Source: Anolis carolinensis (lineage: Eukaryota). From it: a stretch of DNA of 64,000 nt. Below, one piece after another: positions 40,705 to 60,430 of this stretch (the first letter of the stretch is position 1; each line of letters starts with the position of its first letter). The notes below the pieces were generated by a model that worked only from the letters and a program-made list of their open reading frames with translations, was not told the origin of the DNA and searched no databases. Made by a program: the position numbers and the translations under genes. The stretch covers positions 11,583,198 to 11,647,197 of the forward strand of contig NW_026943826.1 of the NCBI RefSeq assembly GCF_035594765.1, read 5' to 3'.

Positions 40705-43700
40705 ATGCGGCCGAGGTGGCTTCTCCTGGCCGGCCTCTTCTTGGCGGGCAATGAGGCTGCCCACCCAGGCTCCTGCAAGTTGCCCTTCCACCTCCCGGGG
40801 GACTTCCTCCTGGGGGGCTTCTTCCCCATCCACAACAACGGCACCTGCTCCAGGTGAGTCAGCGGACATCTCCCTTCCAGCTTTCCTGTCACCAAGTTTG
40901 GTCCCGAACCGTCATTGGCCAGGTGCAATTCCTCTGTTTGCTGTGCACCATAGGAAAGGGTAGGAAAGGGTTAAGGGAGAGGCAGTGGACAGGGTACCAA
41001 ATTACCAGGGCAACTATCCCAATGCCTTGCCAGTATTTGCTTGGCCATGTTCGGTCTGTGTGCCAAGTTTGGTCCAGATCCGTCACTGGCCGGATGCAAT
41101 TCCTCTGTTTGCTGTCCCACACAGGAAAGGGTAGGAAAGGGTTAAGGGAGAGGCAGTGGACGGGGTCCCAAATTACCAGGGCAACTATCCCAAACCCTTG
41201 CCAGTATTCAGTTGGCCATGTTCGGTCCAGATCCGTCACTGGCCGGGTGCAATTCCTCTGTTTGCTGAGCACCATAGGAAAGGGTTAAGGGAGAGGCAGT
41301 GGACACGGTCCCAAATTACCAGGGCAACTATCCCAAACCCTTGCCAGTATTCAGTCAGCCATGTTCGGTCTGTGTGCCAAGTTCGGTCCAGATCCGTCAT
41401 TGGCTGAGTGCAATTCCTCCTTTAGGAAAGGGTTAAGGGAGAGGCAGTGGACGGGGTCCCAAATTACCAGGGCAACTATCCCAAACCCTTGCCAGTACTC
41501 GCTTGGCCATGTTCGGTCTGTGTGCCAAGTTTGGTCCAGATCCATCATTGGCTGGGTGCAATTCCTCCTTTAGGAAAGGGTTAAGGGAGAGGCGGTGGAC
41601 GGGGTCCCAAATTACCAGGGCAACTATTCCAAAGCCTTGCCAGAATTCAGTCGACCAAGTTCAGTCTGTATGCCAAGTTTGGTCCAGATCCGTCATTGGC
41701 CGGGCGCAATTCCTCTGTTTGCTGTGCACCATAGGAAAGGGTAGGAAAGGGTTAAGGGAGAGGCAGTGGGCAAATCTACACATACAGATTTTCACTTTTA
41801 TTATGTGTATGTATAGATTTTTATGCCATGCTTTGGGGGCACCAGGACGTAAAATGAGTCATGGGGGTCACATGTAAGGAGACACTGACTTGTTATTGTT
41901 ATATGTTATTGTTTACTGATGTATTCTACATTCTTATTGTTTTGTATCTGATATTTCTGTGAGCCGCCCCAAGTCCGCCTCGGGGGAGATGGTGGCGGGA
42001 TACAAATAAACTACTACTACTACTACTACTTCTACTACTTCTATTTCTACTTCTTCTACTTCTACTACTTCTACTTTTTCTTCTACTTCTACTTCTACTA
42101 CTTCTACTTTTTTTTCTACTTCTACTTCTTCTACTTCTACTTTTACTTTTTCTTCTACTTCTACTACTACTTCTTCTACTACTTTTTCTTCTACTTTTAC
42201 TTTTACTTCTTCTTCTTCTACTTCTTCTAGTACTTCTTCTACTTCTACTTTTTTTCTACTTCTACTTCTTCTACTTTTTCTTCTACTTCTACTACTTCTC
42301 CTTGTCTTTCTCCACCCAATTAACGGAGGACCACCTCTGCCCTGTTGTGGCCCAAAGACAAAACTCCCCCCAGCCCTGGCCCTGACGCCTTCTCCCTTCC
42401 GCCGCAGCCTGGACCCCTGGGGCTTCACCCAGTCGCAGGCCATGAGCTTGGCCGTGGAGGAAATCAACCTCTCCTCCCACCTGCTGCCCAATGTCTCCTT
42501 GGGCTACCACATCTGGGACTCCCCCACGGACACCCTCTTCCTCCGGGGGCTCTTCCGGCTGGCTCCCGGTCAACGGGAAAGCCCTCACGGTGCTGCGGAC
42601 TGGGCCCGGAAGGTGTTTGGTGTGGTGGGCCCCTACGAGTCCGTCCTGGCCCCGCTGGCCTCCCACATCCTCAGCCTCTATGGCCTCCCGCAGGTAAGAC
42701 TCTTCCCAGGTGTCTCTGGGATTCGTCAACGAGGTTTTGGCGGTGGTCAGGGGAGCTTTTGCACAATTAAAACGAGCTGTGCCCGTACCATGGGAAGCCA
42801 GACTAGTCCATGCCCTTGTTGCACCTCAAATAGACTACTGCAACGAGCTCTATGTGGGGCTGTCCTTGAAGACTGTTCAGAGGCTTCAAGTAGTCCAGTG
42901 GGTGGCTGTCAGGTTGCTCACCGGAGCGACGTACGACGACATACAACCCCCTTATGTCAGCTCCACCCGCTGCCCCTTTGCTACCAAGCACAATTCAAAG
43001 TGCTGGCCTTGGCCGATAAAGTCCTAAATGGCTCTGAATGTGTGGAACTGCTGGGGAGGCCGTACTCTCAGTCCCACTGCCTTCGTAAACAAGACTGCGG
43101 TGGGACTGAGAGTAGCCTTTTCGGCAACACGGAACCAGCACAATGTAGCACACAAATGACGACCGCCATGGGACTGGGTGCTACATTTTCATATTTATAT
43201 GATATTTACACGTTTTGACTGTTTATTGCATTGATGTTATTGAGGGCTTGCCTCTCCTTCCTCCAGATCAGCTACAGCATCAAGGACGGGAACTTTGACA
43301 ACAGCAGCCAGCAGTCGCTGCTCTTCCGGACGGTGCCCAGCACGGCCCACCAGCTGGACGGCATCGTGGCGCTGGTCCGGGCCTTCCGTTGGGAGTGGGT
43401 CTCGGCCGTGGGCAGCGGCACCAAGGCCACCCAGAAGTCGGTCCGGATCCTCATCGACAGGGCCGCCGCGCAGGGCGTCTGCATCTCCTACCAGGGGCTC
43501 ATGCCCGGCGGGCCGGTCTCCACCTTGTCCCAGTTGCGGAAGGTGGTGGAGAACATCAAGAGGGCCGGGACCAACGTCACCATCGTCCTGGGCAACGACG
43601 CCACTGTCCAGCAGTTCTTCCAGGTGGTGGTCGCGCTGGGGATCACCGGCAAGGTCTGGGTGGCCACCGAGAGCTGGGTCTTGACGGACGCGGTGGCCAC

Positions 43701-45454
43701 GCTGCCGGGCATGGAGCGGGTGGGCACTGTCCTGGGGTTGACCATCAGGCCCATAGAGCTGCCTCACGTCAGGCGCTTCGTAGAGGAGGCGCTTAGTTCC
43801 GGACCCCCCCACGGCTCCTCGTGCCCACAGTCCTGCTTCAAGTGTCCACCACCCTCTCCAGAATCCCTGACCGGCCTCCTGGACTCCACCCTCTGGAACT
43901 GGTCCTTCTACTCCTACGCCGCCGTCTATGCCTTCGCCCATGCTCTCCACCGCAGCCTCGCGTGCAGCCAGGAAGCCTGTCCCTCCAGTCAGGAGCCCCA
44001 GCCGTGGCAGGTGAGCCATGATCCTGGAGAAGACGCTGGCGGTGGTTGCGTCTGGAATGTGTCACCCCTTCCCTCGCTTGTCTCTCCTTCCAGCTTCTTG
44101 AGGCGCTGCACGAGGTGGACTTTCCTCTCCTGAACAACACCATCAAGTTCAGCGGCCAGCAGGACCTTTTCCTGGGCTACGACGTCATGACCTGGGCCTG
44201 GAAGGACGGCGGCGGCGGCGTGGACTACGTGAAGATCGGCAGCTACATGGCCCAGAGCCTGGATATCAACTGGACCCAAATTAGATGGCCGGGTCCTGAA
44301 GGCCAGGTGAGGCTGGAGATGCACCTGTCTCACTTATTCCTTCTTTGGAGGCTTTTAAGCAGAGGCTGGATGGCCATCTGTCAGGGGTGCTTTGAATGCG
44401 ATTTCCTGCTTCTTGGCAGAATGGGGTTGGACTGGATGGCCCATGAGGTCTCTTCCAACTCTACTATTCTATGATTCTATGATTATTCCAACAATTCTGA
44501 CCAATTTGGTGTCCAATCCCTTTGATTCCTGGCTCTTGAGGTTCCTCTTAAGGCATGTTGTCTTCTCCAGGGCTTGTCCCAATGTAAGCTGTCCCGAGTC
44601 CTTCGGGAGATGGAGCGGGATATAAATAAAAATTTATTATTATTATTATTTGAAACACAACAAGATGAGTCCACAGCACACACTCTGCTGGCTGTTGTAC
44701 TGGATCACACGTCGGACACTTCCCAAGATGTTGTTGTTATTATTATTATTGTATGACACAGGAAACAAGATAGATATGCTGGATTTCATATCACAAAATC
44801 ACAAGACGAACACTTCCCAAGTTATTGTTATTATTTGAAACACAACAAGATGAGTCCACAGCAGACACTCTGCTGGCTGTTGTATGGGATCACACGTCGG
44901 ACACTTCCCAAGTTGTTGTTGTTGTTATAATTATTATTGTATGACACAGCAAACAAGATAGATATGCTGGATTTCATATCACAAAATCACAAGACGAACA
45001 CTTCCCAAGTTATTATTATTATTGTTCTTATTCTTATTTGAAACACAACAAGATTAGTCCACAGCAGACACTCTGCTGGCTGTTGTACTGGATCACACAT
45101 CGGACACTTCCCAAGTTATTATTATTATTGTTCTTATTCTTATTTGAAACACAACAAGATTAGTCCACAGCAGACACTCTGCTGGCTGTTGTACTGGATC
45201 ACACATCGGACACTTCCCAAGTTATTATTATTATTGTTCTTATTCTTATTTGAAACACAACAAGATTAGTCCACAGCAGACACTCTGCTGGCTGTTGTAC
45301 TGGATCACACATCGGACACTTCCCAAGTTATTATTATTATTATTTGAAACTCAAGACGAGTCCACAGCAGACACTCTGCTGGCTGTTGTATTGGATCACA
45401 CGTCGGACACTTCCCAAGTGTCTAGGACTGTGTGATGTATCGGCGAATAATGCG

Positions 45455-45525
<71 letters not shown>

Positions 45526-47736
45526 GGAACAAGAGCACCTTCGTATGGTTGGAGTTGAGCATCGCCTCCAGATCTTTGTCTATTGTATGTTATGGTTCAC
45601 TGTGTCGAAAGGCATTGAATGTGTACTCTGTAATCCGCTCTTGAGTCCCGCAGGGAATAGAAATAAAGGGTATTATTATTATTATTATTATTGACACAAC
45701 AACATTGTATGACACAGCAAACAAGATAGATATGCTGGATTTCTTTCACAAAATCACAAGTCGAACACTTCCCAAGTGTCTAGGACTGTGTGATGTATTT
45801 TCAGATGATGCGTGCAGATCTCAGTAGGGTGGCCTTTTGCAGTTGGCAGATCGTAATTTTGTCAATGTCTATTGTTTCCAAATTATTATTATTATTATTA
45901 TTATTATTCTGCTAAGGTGCCCAGCTCCTCCTGCGCCAAGGAGTGTGCCGCCGGTCAAAGCCGGAGCAAGCAACTGTTGGACGAATGCCTGTGCCGCTGC
46001 GACGACTGCGTGGAGGGGACCTACCAGAACCAAACAAGTAAGAGTGGAAGGCGTTGGAACAGAGGCGGGATGGTCATCTGTTGGGAGGGCTTTGGGTGTT
46101 AACAGACTGTGGGCACAGTCTTCGCCCAGCAGGAGGTGGGATGGGAACTGGTGTCTTATATATTCAGAGGGGAAACTATCAGAACTATCTTTTTATGGAT
46201 TGTGGAAAGATGGAATAAACAACGTGTCTGATATATACAGGTTCGAGAGGGGAAACTATTAGAACTATCTTTTTAGGGATTGTGGAAAGATGGAATAAAC
46301 AACGTGTCTGATATATGCAGGTTTGAGAGGGGAAACTATTAGAACTATCTTTTTAGGGATTGTGGGAAAATGGAATAAACAACTTGTCTGATATATAAAG
46401 GTTGGAGAGGGGAAACTATTAGAACTATCTTTTTAGGGATTGTGGAAAGATGGAATAAACAACTTGTCTGATATATGCAGGTTTGAGAGGGGAAACTATT
46501 AGAACTATCTTTTTAGGGATTGTGGGAAAATGGAATAAACAACTTGTCTGATATATACAGGTTGGAGAGGGGAAACTATTAGAACTATCTTTTTAGGGAT
46601 TGTGGAAAGATGGAATAAACAACTTGTCTGATATATACAGGTTGGAGAGGGGAAACTATTAGATCTTTTTAGGGATTGTGGAAAGATGGAATAAATAACT
46701 TGTCTTATTGTCGTGAGCTTGACTGTAACTCCAGAGCCTGACACTGGGATTCCTTCCAATTCTATGATCCTCCGCAGATTCTGATGACTGCCTGCCCTGC
46801 CCCAACGGGACGTGGTCCCCCCCACGTAGCTCCCGCTGCTTTCCTCCATCCGTCACCTTCCTGCGGCTGAGCGACAGCAACGTGGTGGCCTTGCTGGCGG
46901 TGGCCTCGGTGGGCTTCCTGCTGCTGCTGGGTTGCTTGCTGGTCTTTGCTGCCCACCGCCACACCCCTGTGGTGCGTGCCGCCGGCGGGGGGCTGGCCTT
47001 CATCATGCTGGTGGCTCTACTAGCCTCCTGTGCGGCCGCCGTGCTCTTTGTTGGCCAGCCCTCGTCCCGCACCTGCCTCATCCGGCAGCCCATCTTCGCC
47101 CTGTGCTTCACGGCCTGCGTCTCCTGCCTCCTGGTCCGCTCGCTCCAAGTGGTGGTGATCTTCAAGGCGGCCGGGCGGCTGCACCGAGGCCGGCAGTGCT
47201 GGCGCCGCTTCCAGGGCCCCTACCTGGCCGTGGGGCTGAGCTGCGGGGTGCAGGCCACCCTCTGCGCCGCCTGGCTGAGCCTCTCTCCGCCGGCCCTGAT
47301 GCAGCAGGCCTCGGGGCCCCGGGAGGTGTCCCTGCGCTGCTGGGAGGGCCCCTTCCTGGGCCTGGGGGCCGTGCTGGGCTACATCACCCTCCTGGCCGGC
47401 GCCTGCTTCCTCCTGGCCTTCTGGGGCCGACACCTGCCCGAGAACTACTCCGAGGCCCGGCTGCTGACCGCCAGCATGCTGGTCTTTCTCATGGGCTGGG
47501 GCGCCTTCCTCTTCATGTACGCCACCAACGGGAGCCAGCAGACCGCCGCCCTCCAGATGTTCACCGTCCAGACCAGCGTCTACGCCGTGCTCTGCACCTT
47601 CTTCCTCCCCCGCTGCTACGTCATCCTCTTCCGCCCGGAGCGCAACACCGTCGCCCACTTCCGGACCTGCATCCAGGCCTACACCACCACCGCCGCCGAC
47701 CCCGAGACACCACGCCCCGGCACGCAAGGAGTGTGA
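40705..47736 (+). CDS. Type 1 taste receptor (T1R/TAS1R family class C GPCR), non-canonical member, 6 exons, 823 aa, intact
   Basis: Exons 40705-40853, 42408-42693, 43267-44010, 44094-44306, 45917-46037, 46778-47736. Total 2472 nt, phases 2,0,0,0,1, all GT-AG, no stops. Signal peptide, PGDFLLGGFFPIH, QAMSLAVEEIN...LLPNVSLGY, VVGP, PQISY, FRTVPS, FRWEWV, CISY, KVWVATESW, YAAVYAFAHALH, PWQLLEAL, a cysteine-rich domain, and a 7TM with HTPVVRAAGG, CLIRQPIFALCFTACVSCLLVRSLQ, LPENYSEAR, FLPRCYVILFRPERNTVAHFRTCIQAYTT (T1R1/T1R2-type tail). Confidence 0.93.
40885..41817 (-). repeat. ~150-180 bp tandem repeat in T1R intron 1, probably Helitron-derived
   Basis: About 5.5 units (ccaagtttggtccagatccgtcattggc...ttaccagggcaactatcc). 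Ends in ttttattatgtgtatgtataga|t, which resembles a Helitron 5' TC end on the minus strand. Confidence 0.65.
42011..42300. repeat. (CTA/CTT)n pyrimidine-rich low-complexity tract
   Basis: ctactactacttctacttct... for ~290 bp just upstream of T1R exon 2. Confidence 0.85.
42770..43030 (+). mobile_element. L2-clade LINE fragment in T1R intron 2
   Basis: LVHALVAPQIDYCNELYVGLSLKTVQRLQVVQWVAVRLLTG is a degenerate form of the L2 motif LVHALVTSRLDYCNALY.GLP......LQ..QNAAARL.TG. Confidence 0.7.
44651..45880 (-). mobile_element. Cluster of tandemly multiplied Dong/R4 3'-end fragments in (TTA)n tracts, T1R intron 4
   Basis: Repeated gacacagcaaacaagatagatatgctggatt and gaaacacaacaagat..cagacactctgctggctg units separated by TTA microsatellites. 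Same family at ~12615-13070, 21205-21295, 21698-21780, 23446-23635, 32206-32378 and 50416-50558. Confidence 0.75.
46165..46705. repeat. 92 bp tandem repeat, ~6 copies, T1R intron 5
   Basis: gagaggggaaactattagaactatctttttagggattgtggaaagatggaataaacaacttgtctgatata repeated. Confidence 0.85.
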
Positions 47737-48436
47737 GGAGCCTCAAGACCCGCCTTTCGCAATGCCCAGACATTCTCGGGTTGGAAGAGACCCCTAAGGA
47801 CATCCCACTCCATTCTGCCTGGAAGACACCATTCAATCCCTCCCAACAGATGAATAGAATCCTAGGGTTGGGAGAGGCCTCCAAAGGACATCCAGTCCAG
47901 CCCCTTTCTGCCTGGAAGACACCATTCAATCCCTCCCAAGAGATGAATATTGGGATCCTAGGGTTGGGAGAGGCCCCCAAAGGACATGCATTCCAGTCCC
48001 CTTCGGCCAGGCAGGAAGACACCATCCAAGCCCTCCCAACAGATGAATAGAATCCTAGGGTTGGGAGAGGCCTCCAAAGGACATCCAGTCCAGCCCCTTT
48101 CTGCCTAGAAGACACCATTCAATCCCTCCCAACAGATGCATATTGGAATCCTAGGGTTGGGAGAGGCCCCCAAAGGACATCCAGTCCAGCCCCTTTCTGA
48201 CTTGAAGACACCATTCAATCCCTCCCAACAGATGCATATTGGAATCCTAGGGTTGGGAGAGGCCCCCAAAGGACATGCAGTCCAGTCCCCTTCTGCCAGG
48301 CAGGAAGACACCATCCAAGCCCTCCTGACAGATGGCTATTCAGCCACAGATACAATAGGTAGATACACTATATTCTAATATATATATATATATATATATC
48401 ACACACAATAAGTACATACACTATTTTCTATGACAT

Positions 48437-51127: not shown

Positions 51128-57753
<6,626 letters not shown>

Positions 57754-58043: not shown

Positions 58044-60430
58044 ATGCGGATGCTGGTGCTGATGCTCCTGGGGATGCGGATCCAGGCCTGCCCAGAAGGT
58101 GAGCCCCTTGGCACCATTCGATCCCTCCCAACAGATGGCCATCCAACCCTCTGCTTTGGAATCTAGAGAAGGGAACGCCAGCAGAGTATATTTATATAGA
58201 AAGTTGGGTCCTTAAAGGTCATAGAAGCCTGTCTAGGTAAAGGCACCACTCGATCCCTCCCGACAGATGGCCATCTGGACTCTACTTAAAAGCCTCCAGG
58301 GAAGGAGATGCAACCAGAGTATTAGGGCCCTGAAAGCCATTGGATCCCACCTGTTTATTTATTCATTTATTTAGCAGTAATGCTCAGTAGTAATTACTGT
58401 ATTTACGAATTTAGCACCAAAATATCACGATGGATTGAAAACATTGACTACAAAAATGTGTTGGATAATCCAGAATGTTGGATAAGTGAGACTCTACTGT
58501 ATATGAAATTGTACAATACATTGTGAATCAATTAAAAAGTTATTAAAATTGCATCAGACATTCATAAAAACACTTATAAAATACAGATGGGCATGTTCGA
58601 GTCTAAAAGACTGGGTCTGTCAATTGGGTTTCTGTTTCTGCCATAAAGGCACCATTCGATCCCTCCCGACAGATGGCCATCCGGACTCTACTTAAAAGCC
58701 TCCAGGAAAGGGGATGACAGCAGAATATATTTCTCTATAGAGTTGGAAGGGCTCCCTAAAGGTAATCTAGTCCCACCTCTTTCAGCCATAAAGGCACAAT
58801 TCGATCCCTCCTGACAGATGGCCATCCAGACTCTACTTAAAAGCCTCCAGGAAAGGGGATGACAGCAGAATATATTTCTCTATAGAGTTGGAAGGGCTCC
58901 CTAAAGGTAATCTAGTCCCACCTCTTTCAGCCATAAAGGCACAATTCGATCCCTCCTGGCAGATGGCCATCCGGACTCTACTTAAAAGCCCACATCAGAG
59001 GGGTCCCTAAAGGGCATGCAGTCTTCCCCATGCAAAGCAGTCAGGCACCATTCGATCCCTCCCGACAGATAGCCATCCAGACTCTACTTAAAAGCCCACA
59101 TCAGAGGGGTCCCTAAAGGGCATGCAGTCTTCCCTATGCAAAGCAGTCAGGCACCATTCGATCCCTCCCAATAGATGGCCATCCAGACTCTACTTAAAAG
59201 TTTCCAGAGAAGGGAACACCGCCAGAGTATATTTCTTTACAGAGTTAGGAGGGCTCGCTAAAGGCCATCCAGTCCTACCCCTTTCTGCTGTAAAGGAAGG
59301 CAGCATTTGATCCCTCCCGACAGAGGCCATCCGGACTCTCAGACACTCAGAAAACAGAGGAATTCCAGACATGAGTCAATCAGGGCCAGCTAACACCTCC
59401 CAACAAAGGATTACCCACAGGCAGTAAACAGCCAGGCCTTGAAACTGCATGGCTATCCAATGCTAATCAAGGTGGCCAATTGAAACCGACAAGAGTGAGT
59501 TCTTTCTTCCACCCTGGAAGTTCCACAGATACATAAACCCCACTTGCCTAGTTGACAACAGACCTCACAACCTCTGAGGATGCCTGTGGGCGAAACGTCA
59601 GGCCAGGCAGCCCAGAAAACTCACAGCAAACCAGTGATTCCGGCCATGAAAGCCTTCGACAACACATCCGGGGGAAGGACCCTAAAGGGCATCCAGTCTT
59701 ACCCATGTAAACTATTCAAGGAGGCACCACTCGATCCCTCCTGACAGATGGCCATCCAGACACTGCTTAAGAATCCCTCTCCTTCATTAGGCTCCTACCG
59801 CGACCCCTCTTCAGGCCTCGAGGACTGCCTCCCCTGCGACGTTTGTGACGGTGAGTCCTTCCGTGGGGCCAAACGTGGGGTCTTGGATGGGGGGCTGCCA
59901 CCTCCTCCTTTAATGAGACCCCCTTCTATTTTTCCTCCTTCTCAGAAGGGAGTTCCTATCTCCGTCCCTGCGGCCCCGAGGCCAACGCCGTCTGCAAATG
60001 CCCCCCCGGAAGAGAGTGCGGGGGCAACACCTGTGTCCGGTGCCACTGTCCGGAGGGTCAGGAGCCCACTAAGGATGGTGAGAGGTCAGTGGGGAGGGAC
60101 GGAGTGTGACATCCCTTTTCCTTGTGTGACACCCCACTTGTTTCCTCTGCCAGGCGGCTGCCAACGCTGCCCCGAAGGGGAGTTCAGCGACGGGACCTCG
60201 GGACCCTGCCGCCCCTGGAGCCGGTGAGTCCCTCTTCGTATACATACAAACACAACAACAACAACAACAACAATAACACTATATTCCTCCCTTCTCCCCA
60301 GATTACAGTATAAACAGAACCAAGTAAAAATTCAATACAATGAGACACACATACACAAAGGCAAAGGCTTCTCCTTTCATTTCCGGCTTTGGAGGCCGTG
60401 CTCATCTTTTGGGGAAGGAGCCTGACATGT

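What the first reader, a model, noticed from the sequence alone, without database searches (positions are those of the whole stretch)
42408..43700. Remodelled ligand pocket in the T1R Venus flytrap: amino-acid-binding signature largely replaced
Seen versus recalled consensus: GPYES instead of GPDST/GPDNS/GPHSS; ISYSIKD instead of ISYAASS/ITYSAIS/VSYGASM; RTVPSTAHQ lacking the Asp of T1R1/T1R3 (P.D..Q); and GSGTKATQ (43411-43434) replacing the near-invariant S.D.YG motif. The Glu of WVATESW is kept. Established: in mGluR, CaSR and T1R these Ser/Thr, Asp, Tyr and Glu residues grip the alpha-carboxylate and alpha-amino groups of the ligand. Inference: the receptor may detect a different class of tastant (for example amines, sugars or bulkier ligands), or may act as a non-binding partner subunit.
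Basis: partly seen in the sequence, partly recalled or inferred. Interest (0 to 1): 0.78.

Follow-up and report, generated by a model that had tools for sequence, protein, structure and literature searches.

The report
Lizard TAS1R7 with rebuilt ligand pocket
This is the green anole's already catalogued orphan taste receptor TAS1R7; its binding cleft has lost most of the residues that related receptors use to hold amino acids, a change shared by every lizard examined, which fits a recent report that it answers to neither amino acids nor sugars and leaves its real ligand unknown.

Summary

The gene is not new. It is Anolis carolinensis TAS1R7 of Nishihara et al. 2023, which NCBI mislabels "T1R1".

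At the five canonical alpha-amino-acid contact positions:
- Anolis keeps the Ser of GPYES and the Glu of WVATESW.
- It has Lys for Ser/Thr, Thr for Asp and Ala for Tyr.

This is not decay:
- In 15 squamate species the Lys, the Glu and a new Trp are invariant, and the Tyr is always Ala or Ser.
- Clade-specific substitutions are enriched at pocket positions (3/11 vs 18/378, p=0.017).
- The gene is intact in all these species.
- dN/dS is 0.40 between two Anolis species and 0.47 between two lacertids.

Anolis is the most derived member: GC3 is 0.90, it has the longest branch, and it has lost a conserved cysteine.

A 2026 preprint reports anole T1R7 expressed in taste buds. With T1R3 or T1R4 it gave no response to 17 amino acids, five sugars or sucralose, apart from a small trehalose response with T1R4.

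My best reading is a receptor with changed specificity and an unknown ligand. The gene is known, but I found no published description of this pocket. The scan had already noted the gene itself in this same window (s1-632811).

The parts
40705..40853 (+). TAS1R7 exon 1: start codon, signal peptide, first VFT residues. It ends in phase 2 (AG|GT), and the split codon AG+C gives Ser.
   Evidence: The same exon is found in A. sagrei by tblastn. NCBI model P0171 lacks it.
42408..42693 (+). Exon 2 (VFT lobe 1). Holds WDSPTD, where Pro 42523-42525 replaces a conserved Cys, and GPYES (42628-42642; contact Ser 42640-42642).
   Evidence: (ANF_receptor, 6.4e-09).
43267..44010 (+). Exon 3 (VFT hinge and lobe 2). 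Key codons, each named by the canonical residue it replaces: Lys 43282-43284 (Ser/Thr position), Thr 43342-43344 (Asp position), Ala 43426-43428 (Tyr position), retained Glu 43669-43671, clade-specific Trp 43900-43902.
   Evidence: (ANF_receptor, 3e-29).
44094..44306 (+). Exon 4 (end of the VFT).
   Evidence: (exact match in P0171).
45917..46037 (+). Exon 5 (cysteine-rich domain), ending in phase 1.
   Evidence: NCD3G, 4.8e-07; 30 bits, below the 38.9-bit cut-off because the domain is split between exons 5 and 6.
46778..47736 (+). Exon 6: rest of the cysteine-rich domain, the seven-helix domain, and the TGA stop at 47734-47736.
   Evidence: (7tm_3, 3.6e-62).
33126..34190 (+). Upstream neighbour: large coding exon of ERRFI1 (MIG6-like C-terminal region).
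Evidence: ORF translation.
51128..51427 (-). Downstream neighbour: last coding exon of PARK7 (DJ-1), convergent with TAS1R7.
   Evidence: ORF. A DJ-1_PfpI gene sits in the same position and orientation beside the orthologue in A. sagrei, Ascaphus, Pogona and Zootoca.

Best explanation
The gene is Anolis carolinensis TAS1R7. It is an intact class C taste GPCR under purifying selection, made of a Venus flytrap (VFT), a cysteine-rich domain and a seven-helix domain.

Its orthosteric cleft no longer has the cradle that mGluR, CaSR, T1R1 and fish T1R2 use to grip the alpha-carboxylate and alpha-amino groups of an L-amino acid.
- The Ser/Thr that hydrogen-bonds the ligand backbone (medaka T1r2a Ser165, human T1R1 Ser172) is a Lys.
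- The Tyr is a small residue.
- The whole S.D.YG loop is rebuilt as G-x-G-T-(K/R/Q)-(A/S)-(S/T).
- A Trp is fixed on the lobe-2 helix.

The rebuild happened before crown squamates diverged and has been kept since. Anolis then added its own changes on a fast, GC-biased branch: Asp/Glu to Thr, GPD to GPY, and loss of a conserved disulfide Cys.

Shown here: the identity of the gene, the residue replacements, their conservation, and purifying selection.

Inferred: the receptor cannot bind L-amino acids in the canonical pose. It most likely works as the ligand-recognising subunit of a heterodimer, probably with T1R4, for a tastant class that is neither the 17 amino acids nor the sugars already tested. 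The two fixed basic residues beside a retained Glu point towards an anionic or zwitterionic ligand, but that part is speculation.
For: Identity.
- Pfam finds ANF_receptor, NCD3G and 7tm_3. The best solved relatives are T1R3, T1R2 and T1R1.
- The AlphaFold model has mean pLDDT 81.7 and matches full-length TAS1R2/TAS1R3 and CaSR at E about 1e-49.
- Exons 3-6 are identical to NCBI XP_062822029.1 of A. carolinensis.
- Supplementary Data of PMC10781636 prints this protein as Anolis_carolinensis_T1R7.
- It falls in a 100%-supported clade with squamate orthologues, apart from T1R1, T1R2, T1R3/4 and T1R6.
- PARK7 synteny holds in five species.

Pocket.
- Squamate columns: Lys 15/15, Glu 15/15, Trp 15/15, Tyr position Ala 10 and Ser 5.
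- All other T1R/CaSR rows keep Tyr and an acidic residue.
- Clade-specific substitutions are enriched in literature-defined pocket columns: 3/11 vs 18/378, Fisher p=0.017.
- In medaka T1r2a, S165I or S165A removes or weakens the amino-acid response, and human T1R1 S172A does the same (PMC5457512).
- S172, D192, Y220 and E301 coordinate L-Glu in T1R1 (PMC13034538).

Selection.
- dN/dS for A. carolinensis vs A. sagrei is 0.40 overall, 0.50-0.53 in the VFT and 0.26 in exon 6, all significantly below 1.
- Podarcis vs Zootoca gives 0.47.
- There are three tandem copies in Podarcis lilfordi.

Function, from literature.
- Anole T1R7 was cloned from oral tissue and detected in tongue taste buds.
- With T1R3 or T1R4 it gave no response to 17 amino acids, 5 sugars or sucralose, apart from a small trehalose signal (preprint 10.64898/2026.08.28.746343).
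Against: - No ligand is known, so 'new specificity' is an inference from conservation.
- Averaged over the 11 scorable pocket columns, squamate T1R7 is no more conserved than the rest of the VFT: mean entropy 1.025 in both, permutation p=0.51. The Ser142-equivalent column is hypervariable. A tightly tuned pocket would be expected to be more conserved than the VFT background.
- VFT dN/dS of 0.5-0.6 is high.
- The negative cell assays could also mean poor surface expression or a non-signalling subunit.
- The pocket list comes from a fish T1R2 structure and may not describe the T1R7 cleft.
- I could not inspect side-chain geometry because no model coordinates are returned.
- Axolotl T1R7 as printed in the paper keeps the canonical motifs. 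The ancestral T1R7 was therefore probably an ordinary amino-acid-type receptor, and the change could be loss rather than gain.
Confidence: 0.55

Rival explanations
1. Self-latched or non-binding subunit. The invariant Lys on lobe 1 reaches the invariant Glu on lobe 2, which normally binds the ligand's alpha-ammonium, and so stands in for the ligand. T1R7 would then close, or be held, without a tastant. It would serve as a constitutive or modulatory partner while the other subunit (T1R4 or T1R3) does the sensing, as GABA-B2 does for GABA-B1.
For: - The Lys sits exactly at the backbone-contact position of lobe 1, and the Glu at the lobe-2 contact position. Both are 15/15 invariant.
- The other contact positions are free to vary (Ser142 column entropy 2.35), as expected if no external alpha-amino acid is bound.
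- No agonist was found in the published panel.
- The gecko T1R3-like protein that groups with shark T1R3-likes, probably T1R4, keeps Ser, Tyr and Glu.
Against: - T1R7 belongs phylogenetically to the T1R1/2/5/6 side, the ligand-recognising subunits, not to T1R3/T1R4.
- A new invariant Trp and a rebuilt, conserved loop look like a reshaped site rather than an abandoned one.
- The tandem triplication in Podarcis is more typical of ligand-facing chemoreceptors.
- No geometry could be measured.
Confidence: 0.2
2. Relaxed constraint. T1R7 is drifting towards loss, most advanced in Anolis, and the odd motifs are accumulated damage in a receptor that no longer matters. The changes are partly driven by GC-biased gene conversion.
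For: - The Anolis stem branch (0.42) is the longest in the clade, and its amino-acid composition is skewed.
- GC3 is 0.90-0.91 and the GARP fraction 0.29-0.33, against 0.20-0.23 in other lizards.
- A near-universal VFT cysteine is lost, and the first lobe-1 loop is shortened.
- VFT dN/dS is 0.5.
- T1R7 was lost in mammals, birds, turtles and crocodilians (PMC10781636).
- The in vitro assays were negative.
Against: - All six exons are open with canonical splice sites in both Anolis species, and full-length models exist in 15 squamate species.
- dN/dS is significantly below 1 in every partition except the 48-codon exon 1.
- All five motifs are identical between two Anolis species that differ at 19% of residues.
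- The key derived residues are invariant across squamates.
- Expression in taste buds is reported.
Confidence: 0.1
3. T1R7 is still an amino-acid or sugar sensor that uses a non-canonical pose. The published negative result would then reflect the heterologous assay (trafficking, wrong partner or wrong G protein), not the pocket.
For: - Mammalian T1R2 also lacks Ser/Thr at this position (Ile in pig T1R2) and lacks the Asp of P.D..Q, yet binds sugars.
- A small trehalose response of T1R7-T1R4 was reported.
- Bichir T1R8/T1R4, another non-canonical pair, responds to branched-chain amino acids (PMC10781636).
Against: - T1R2 keeps the Tyr and the acidic residues that T1R7 lacks.
- Ser165 substitutions remove or weaken amino-acid responses in medaka T1r2a, and the matching S172A does so in human T1R1.
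- Seventeen amino acids and five sugars were tested with two partners.
Confidence: 0.1

Closest known systems
TAS1R7 of Nishihara et al. 2023 (Nat Ecol Evol 8:111; PMC10781636)
   Same: It is this gene. The paper's Supplementary Data prints Anolis_carolinensis_T1R7 with the same motifs. The clade was defined from axolotl and lizards and was proposed to pair with T1R4.
   Different: The paper does not discuss the T1R7 pocket; 'ligand-binding' occurs once in its text. Its axolotl member keeps the canonical motifs (GPQSS, VSYAASS, P.D..Q, SQYGR, ASESW), so the remodelling is a squamate feature, not a feature of the whole clade.
T1R1/T1R3 umami and amino-acid receptor, with medaka T1r2a/T1r3 (PDB 5X2M)
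   Same: Same domain architecture and the same six-exon gene plan. The lobe-1 Ser (T1r2a Ser142) is retained in Anolis, and the lobe-2 acidic residue (T1R1 Glu301) in all squamates.
   Different: Ser172/Ser165 becomes Lys, Asp192 becomes Thr (Glu or Asn in other squamates), and Tyr220 becomes Ala or Ser. Anole T1R1-T1R3 responds to amino acids, whereas T1R7 pairs do not.
Mammalian sweet subunit T1R2
   Same: It is a precedent for a T1R that gave up the Ser/Thr (Ile167) and the Asp of P.D..Q (Ala, with Asp shifted by one) and changed ligand class.
   Different: T1R2 keeps Asp213, Tyr215, Asp278 and Glu302. T1R7 replaces the first two with Thr and Ala and places a Lys between them.
GABA-B2, the non-binding flytrap of a class C heterodimer
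   Same: It is a class C subunit whose flytrap lacks the ligand-contact residues and binds no agonist (stated in PMC5457512).
   Different: T1R7 is not on the partner (T1R3/T1R4) side of the T1R tree, and its substituted residues are strictly conserved rather than free.
Bichir T1R8/T1R4 and elephant-fish T1R6-2/T1R4
   Same: They are non-canonical T1Rs that work as T1R4-dependent heterodimers (PMC10781636).
   Different: Those respond to amino acids, and the T1R6 rows in my alignments keep the canonical Ser, Asp, Tyr and Glu.

Membership tests
Class C GPCR, TAS1R (T1R) family | Venus flytrap (ANF_receptor) + nine-cysteine domain + 7tm_3. | tested here: met
   ANF_receptor on exons 2 and 3, NCD3G on exon 5, 7tm_3 on exon 6 (3.6e-62); the model matches full-length TAS1R2/TAS1R3 and CaSR.
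Class C GPCR, TAS1R (T1R) family | Closer to T1Rs than to CaSR, V2R or mGluR. | tested here: met
   T1R3/T1R2/T1R1 chains score 3e-37 to 2e-23, CaSR 2e-20, mGluR 4e-09 or weaker; it lies inside the T1R clade with CaSR as outgroup.
Class C GPCR, TAS1R (T1R) family | Intact six-exon TAS1R gene. | tested here: met
   six exons, all GT-AG, about 823 codons, no internal stop. The phases join correctly.
TAS1R7 clade | Same sequence as the published Anolis_carolinensis_T1R7. | tested here: met
   (supplement text, with machine-reading noise), compared by eye with the exon translations.
TAS1R7 clade | Monophyly with gecko and bearded-dragon T1R7, separate from T1R1, T1R2, T1R3/4 and T1R6. | tested here: met
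   squamate clade SH-aLRT 100. It is sister to the Ascaphus gene (100) and apart from the true T1R1 of Pogona, crocodile, turtle and mammals.
TAS1R7 clade | Conserved genomic position. | tested here: met
   PARK7/DJ-1 lies convergent and immediately downstream in the window, A. sagrei (34), Ascaphus (52), Pogona (53) and Zootoca (58).
Alpha-amino-acid-binding class C flytrap (mGluR/CaSR/T1R1 type) | Ser/Thr at medaka T1r2a Ser142 / T1R1 Thr149. | tested here: met
   Ser in both Anolis species. In other squamates the column is S, T, P, D, A or V.
Alpha-amino-acid-binding class C flytrap (mGluR/CaSR/T1R1 type) | Ser/Thr at T1r2a Ser165 / T1R1 Ser172 / T1r3 Thr173. | tested here: not met
   Lys in 15/15 squamates.
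Alpha-amino-acid-binding class C flytrap (mGluR/CaSR/T1R1 type) | Asp at T1R1 Asp192 (P.D..Q). | tested here: not met
   Thr in Anolis, Glu in most squamates, Asn in lacertids.
Alpha-amino-acid-binding class C flytrap (mGluR/CaSR/T1R1 type) | Aromatic residue at T1R1 Tyr220 / T1r2a Phe213. | tested here: not met
   Ala (10 species) or Ser (5). Tyr in all 18 other rows.
Alpha-amino-acid-binding class C flytrap (mGluR/CaSR/T1R1 type) | Acidic residue at T1R1 Glu301 / T1r2a Asp289. | tested here: met
   Glu in 15/15.
Alpha-amino-acid-binding class C flytrap (mGluR/CaSR/T1R1 type) | Response to L-amino acids. | not testable with these tools
   From literature only: no response of anole T1R7 with T1R3 or T1R4 to 17 amino acids (preprint).
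Non-binding partner subunit (T1R3/T1R4-like or GABA-B2-like) | Belongs to the T1R3/T1R4 branch. | tested here: not met
   T1R7 is on the T1R1/2/6 side (SH-aLRT 96-97).
Non-binding partner subunit (T1R3/T1R4-like or GABA-B2-like) | Cleft residues evolve without constraint. | tested here: inconclusive
   Mean entropy of the pocket columns equals the VFT mean, but 3 of 11 are invariant and derived.

The most novel reading that the evidence does not exclude
Squamate T1R7 carries a built-in ligand mimic. The invariant lobe-1 Lys occupies the alpha-amino-acid site and salt-bridges to the invariant lobe-2 Glu. The flytrap is then either latched shut without a tastant, or opened and closed by an anion (carboxylate, phosphate or nucleotide) that competes for the Lys. 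This mode of class C receptor operation, and the possible lizard taste modality it implies, has not been described.
Probability: 0.15. Interest if true: 0.75.

Novelty: new variant of a known kind. Interest (0 to 1): 0.5.

Why it matters
T1R7 is one of five T1R clades recognised only in 2023. The anole protein is so far an orphan: it is expressed in taste buds but silent in the one published ligand screen.

The analysis shows that its canonical amino-acid cradle was dismantled before lizards diversified, and that the replacement residues have been held fixed since. This gives a sequence-level reason for the negative amino-acid result. It argues against simply writing the receptor off as non-functional. 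It also points future screens away from amino acids and sugars.

It supplies concrete, testable positions: the Lys, the Ala/Ser at the Tyr site, and the Trp.

If a ligand is found, it would define a taste quality that mammals lost with the gene.

Tried and rejected
- **RNA evidence.** The look-up of sequencing runs found no run on record as RNA. The contigs of four runs run straight through the introns with no exon-exon joints. They are DNA-like and say nothing about expression, so expression rests on the preprint alone.
- **A. sagrei protein P0172** is not on record in the contig index. The newer version P0279 worked.
- **Kuang et al. 2006**, on the family C pocket signature, is not held. The signature is cited instead from PMC5457512 and PMC13034538.
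- **Pocket conservation test.** I asked whether pocket columns are more conserved than the rest of the flytrap. They are not (p=0.51). I report this as evidence against a tightly tuned pocket.
- **Oct octamer.** The motif reported upstream of TAS1R4 is not near the T1R7 start, and the three window hits are no more than chance.
- **Axolotl T1R7.** A search from the Ascaphus protein did not list an axolotl or other salamander T1R7 among its best 120 hits. I could not place the axolotl gene in my own tree, so the timing of the remodelling relative to amphibians stays open.
- **'This is T1R1', as NCBI names it: rejected.** True T1R1 of Pogona, crocodile, turtle and mammals forms a separate clade. 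The paper prints a different, canonical Anolis T1R1.
- **'T1R3/T1R4-type partner': rejected on phylogeny**, although T1R3 was the best PDB hit for exon 3.
- **Structure model.** The AlphaFold model and fold search confirm only the overall fold. No coordinates are returned, so the Lys-Glu distance could not be measured.
- **Joined model.** The full spliced 823-residue model including exon 1 was never assembled or sent to any search. Exons were searched one by one by reference. The database protein P0171 (part of exon 2 through exon 6) stood in for whole-protein work.
Full report
**What is at the coordinates**

The span 42408-43700 is not a single reading frame. It covers exon 2 (42408-42693), intron 2, and the first part of exon 3 (43267-44010) of a six-exon gene on the + strand:
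- exon 1: 40705-40853
- exon 2: 42408-42693
- exon 3: 43267-44010
- exon 4: 44094-44306
- exon 5: 45917-46037
- exon 6: 46778-47736, with TGA at 47734-47736

All introns are GT-AG, the phases join, and there is no internal stop. The product is about 823 residues.

Pfam finds ANF_receptor on exons 2 and 3, NCD3G on exon 5 and 7tm_3 on exon 6.

I never assembled or searched the joined model. For whole-protein comparisons I used the database protein P0171 by its id.

**What gene it is**

- The best solved relatives of exons 2 and 3 are T1R3, T1R2 and T1R1, then CaSR, then mGluRs.
- A search of 1.8 billion representatives with exon 3 gave only three close relatives, at about 50% identity, one of them a skink protein. 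Everything else was at 38% or less.
- A word search from the skink protein recovered full-length orthologues from 15 squamate species. These included NCBI's 'taste receptor type 1 member 1' of Anolis carolinensis, P0171.
- P0171 contains window exons 3-6 letter for letter, so the window is A. carolinensis.
- The Supplementary Data of Nishihara et al. 2023 (PMC10781636) prints Anolis_carolinensis_T1R7 with the same sequence and motifs. Next to it are Gekko and Pogona T1R7 and a separate, canonical Anolis T1R1.
- In my trees the squamate sequences form a clade with SH-aLRT 100. It is distinct from true T1R1 (Pogona, crocodile, turtle, mammals, fish), T1R2, T1R3/T1R4-like and shark T1R6-like clades.
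- The gene lies between ERRFI1 and PARK7. A DJ-1 gene sits convergent and immediately downstream of the orthologue in A. sagrei, Pogona, Zootoca and the frog Ascaphus.

The gene is therefore the known TAS1R7. The NCBI name is wrong, and the NCBI model lacks exon 1.

**Is the pocket really remodelled?**

The canonical contacts are documented in papers I read here.
[quoted passage not shown] S165I or S165A removes or weakens the response, as does S172A in human T1R1. In T1r3 the contacts are Ser150, Thr173 and Ser300 (PMC5457512).
- In T1R1, S172, D192, Y220 and E301 coordinate L-Glu as in mGluRs (PMC13034538).

Gap-free HMMER alignments place the Anolis residues as follows:

| Anolis T1R7 residue | Canonical position |
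|---|---|
| Lys of ISYSIK | T1r3 Thr173 = T1r2a Ser165 = T1R1 Ser172 |
| Thr of PSTAHQ | the Asp of P.D..Q |
| Thr-Lys-Ala of GSGTKA | human T1R2 Asp213-Thr214-Tyr215 |
| Glu of ATESW | T1r3 Ser300 = T1R2 Glu302 = T1R1 Glu301 |
| Tyr-Glu-Ser of GPYES | T1r2a Phe140-Thr141-Ser142 |

Two of the five canonical contacts survive (Ser, Glu) and three are replaced (Lys, Thr, Ala). The contact Ser is kept, and an aromatic at the first position is what medaka T1r2a itself has.

**Decay or design?**

Two independent alignments (and 64/67) give the same picture for 15 squamate species.
- The Lys is invariant, as are the Glu and a Trp at the T1r2a Phe365 position.
- The Tyr position is Ala in ten species and Ser in five. 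It is preceded by Lys, Arg or Gln.
- All 18-36 other T1R and CaSR rows keep the Tyr and, with one exception, the acidic residue. Nearly all keep Ser/Thr at the Lys position.
- The Ser142-equivalent column is hypervariable in squamate T1R7 (S, T, P, D, A, V).
- The Asp position is Glu in most species, Asn in lacertids and Thr only in Anolis.

I took the 13 pocket residues listed for T1r2a, of which 11 could be scored, and compared them with the rest of the flytrap.
- Mean column entropy equals that of the whole flytrap (1.025 vs 1.025, permutation p=0.51). The pocket as a whole is not unusually conserved.
- Columns where squamate T1R7 shares no residue with any other T1R/CaSR row are enriched in the pocket: 3 of 11 against 18 of 378 (Fisher p=0.017).
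- Several further fixed, derived sites flank the pocket residues: Gly for the Asp of S.D, Ser/Thr for the Gly of YG, and Tyr-Ser after the Trp.

The pattern is a concerted rebuild of the core of the site, with release of some former contacts.

**Selection**

The A. sagrei orthologue (locus L001) has all six exons open with canonical splice sites. It carries all five motifs unchanged, although the proteins differ at 19% of positions.

| Comparison (Nei-Gojobori) | Overall dN/dS | Flytrap | Exon 6 (or CRD + seven-helix part) |
|---|---|---|---|
| A. carolinensis vs A. sagrei | 0.40 (dN 0.114, dS 0.286) | 0.50-0.53 | 0.26 |
| Podarcis vs Zootoca | 0.47 | 0.61 | 0.31 |

In the partitions every value is significantly below 1. 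The only per-exon value above 1 was the 48-codon exon 1 (1.28).

- T1R7 is thus constrained, with a fast-evolving flytrap. This holds in lizards generally and is not special to Anolis.
- Podarcis lilfordi has three tandem copies.

**What is special to Anolis**

- The Anolis stem branch is the longest in the clade (0.42), and its composition departs from the rest.
- GC3 is 0.90-0.91, against 0.82 in Pogona, about 0.75 in lacertids and 0.46 in Ascaphus.
- Gly+Ala+Arg+Pro make up 29-33% of residues, against 20-23% in other lizards.
- Anolis alone has GPY for GPD and Thr at the Asp/Glu position.
- It has Pro in place of the cysteine of WDTC, which is present in every other squamate T1R7 and in all other rows but one.
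- It has Arg for the Lys of the PKxY motif.
- Its first lobe-1 loop is shorter.

GC-biased substitution probably contributes to this extra divergence.

**Function**

- Anole T1R4 and T1R7 were cloned from oral tissue.
- All five T1Rs were seen by in situ hybridisation in putative tongue taste buds.
- T1R7 with T1R3 or T1R4 responded to none of 17 amino acids, five sugars or sucralose, apart from a small trehalose signal with T1R4.
- Anole T1R1-T1R3 did respond to amino acids.
- The preprint does not discuss pocket residues. Among the papers that mention T1R7 or TAS1R7 in the library, I read the three on vertebrate T1Rs, and none does.

My own attempt at expression evidence failed. No run is on record as RNA, and the contigs laid are colinear with the genome through the introns.

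The AlphaFold model of P0171 is confident (mean pLDDT 81.7; low only in two loops and the tail). It matches full-length TAS1R2/TAS1R3 and CaSR, so the fold is intact. No coordinates are returned, so side-chain geometry could not be examined.

**Reading**

- Shown: the gene's identity, the replacements, their age and conservation, and purifying selection.
- Inferred: the canonical L-amino-acid pose is no longer possible, which explains the published negative result.
- Most likely (0.55): T1R7 is the ligand-facing subunit of a T1R4-dependent heterodimer with a changed, unknown specificity.
- Rivals: a self-latched or non-binding subunit in which the fixed Lys pairs with the fixed Glu (0.2); relaxed drift, most advanced in Anolis (0.1); an assay artefact hiding a non-canonical amino-acid or sugar response (0.1).

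**Timing**

- The axolotl T1R7 printed in the paper keeps the canonical motifs.
- The Ascaphus gene is sister to the squamate clade with support 100 and shares the PARK7 position. It keeps the lobe-1 Ser, the Asp of P.D..Q, and an acidic lobe-2 residue (Asp for Glu). It already has Asn for the Ser/Thr and Lys-Ser-Ala-Gln for the YG loop.
- I could not place the axolotl gene in my own tree. Whether the loop change is shared or convergent is open.

**Novelty**

The gene (2023) and its silence in assays (2026) are known. I did not find the conserved pocket rebuild, its three invariant derived residues, or the Anolis-specific extras described in the literature I searched. I class it as a new variant of a known kind, of moderate interest.

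Noticed in passing
L004:1-22249 (Podarcis lilfordi): Three T1R7 genes lie head to tail (products of 855, 837 and 762 residues). This is a lineage-specific tandem expansion of an orphan taste receptor. Zootoca has one copy beside PARK7.
   Followed up: partly
L002:10001-23417 (Ascaphus truei): A frog gene named 'T1R1-like' is sister to squamate T1R7 (support 100) and sits beside PARK7 in the same orientation, so it is a positional T1R7 orthologue. The 2023 catalogue reported T1R7 only from axolotl and lizards. Its pocket is half remodelled: Asn for Ser/Thr, KSAQ for the YG loop, with Ser, Asp and an acidic residue kept.
   Followed up: partly
window 40705-42441: NCBI's model of this gene (XP_062822029.1, named 'taste receptor type 1 member 1') starts at an internal Met in exon 2. 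It lacks exon 1, with the signal peptide, and the first 11 codons of exon 2. The name is also wrong, because a separate canonical T1R1 exists in Anolis.
   Followed up: yes
window 42523-42525: Pro replaces the cysteine of the W-D-T-C motif in both Anolis species. Every other squamate T1R7, and all other T1R/CaSR rows but one shark T1R3-like sequence, have Cys here. From my own knowledge this Cys pairs with the exon 1 Cys (kept at 40846-40848) in class C flytraps, so Anolis T1R7 may carry an unpaired cysteine.
   Followed up: partly
window 40705-47733 (coding parts): GC3 of the coding sequence is 0.90 (0.91 in A. sagrei), and the protein is enriched in Gly, Ala, Arg and Pro. This suggests GC-biased gene conversion at this locus. 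The flanking introns are AT-rich and full of repeats.
   Followed up: partly
window 47605-47610: In the conserved P-K-x-Y motif at the end of helix 7, both Anolis species have Arg where all other T1R7s and nearly all other T1Rs have Lys.
   Followed up: no
window 40892-41715, 42010-42303, 44637-45419, 46166-46705, 47813-48334: The introns and 3' flank are packed with tandem arrays: units of 148-171 bp in intron 1, a (CTACTT)n tract of about 290 bp ending about 100 bp before exon 2, units of 91-212 bp in intron 4, an 80-bp unit repeated 6.8 times in intron 5, and a 96/193-bp unit just after the stop codon. Read depth spikes at several of them, so they are dispersed repeats.
   Followed up: no
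window 42710-43027: Intron 2 holds an open frame with a '...IDYCNELYVGL...LQVVQ...' motif, which from memory is typical of the C-terminal part of a LINE reverse-transcriptase ORF. Contig depth rises 100-1000 fold here in DNA runs.
   Followed up: no
window 42527: One of the four runs laid (X4) reads T instead of C, which would change Thr to Met inside WDSPTD. About two dozen other single-base differences between individuals were listed across the 5.5 kb. None of them falls inside the five motifs.
   Followed up: no
window 18769-19269 (- strand): A GC-rich first-exon-like ORF with a signal-peptide-like start, ending in '...SPYNYLQVAYFKV', lies upstream of ERRFI1. It resembles the N-terminus of a leprecan/CRTAP-type protein. 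I did not check this.
   Followed up: no
window 59748-60227: An ORF with a cysteine-rich 'CPEGEFSDGTSGPCRPW' stretch lies beyond PARK7. It looks like a TNF-receptor repeat. TNFRSF9 is the human neighbour of PARK7.
   Followed up: no
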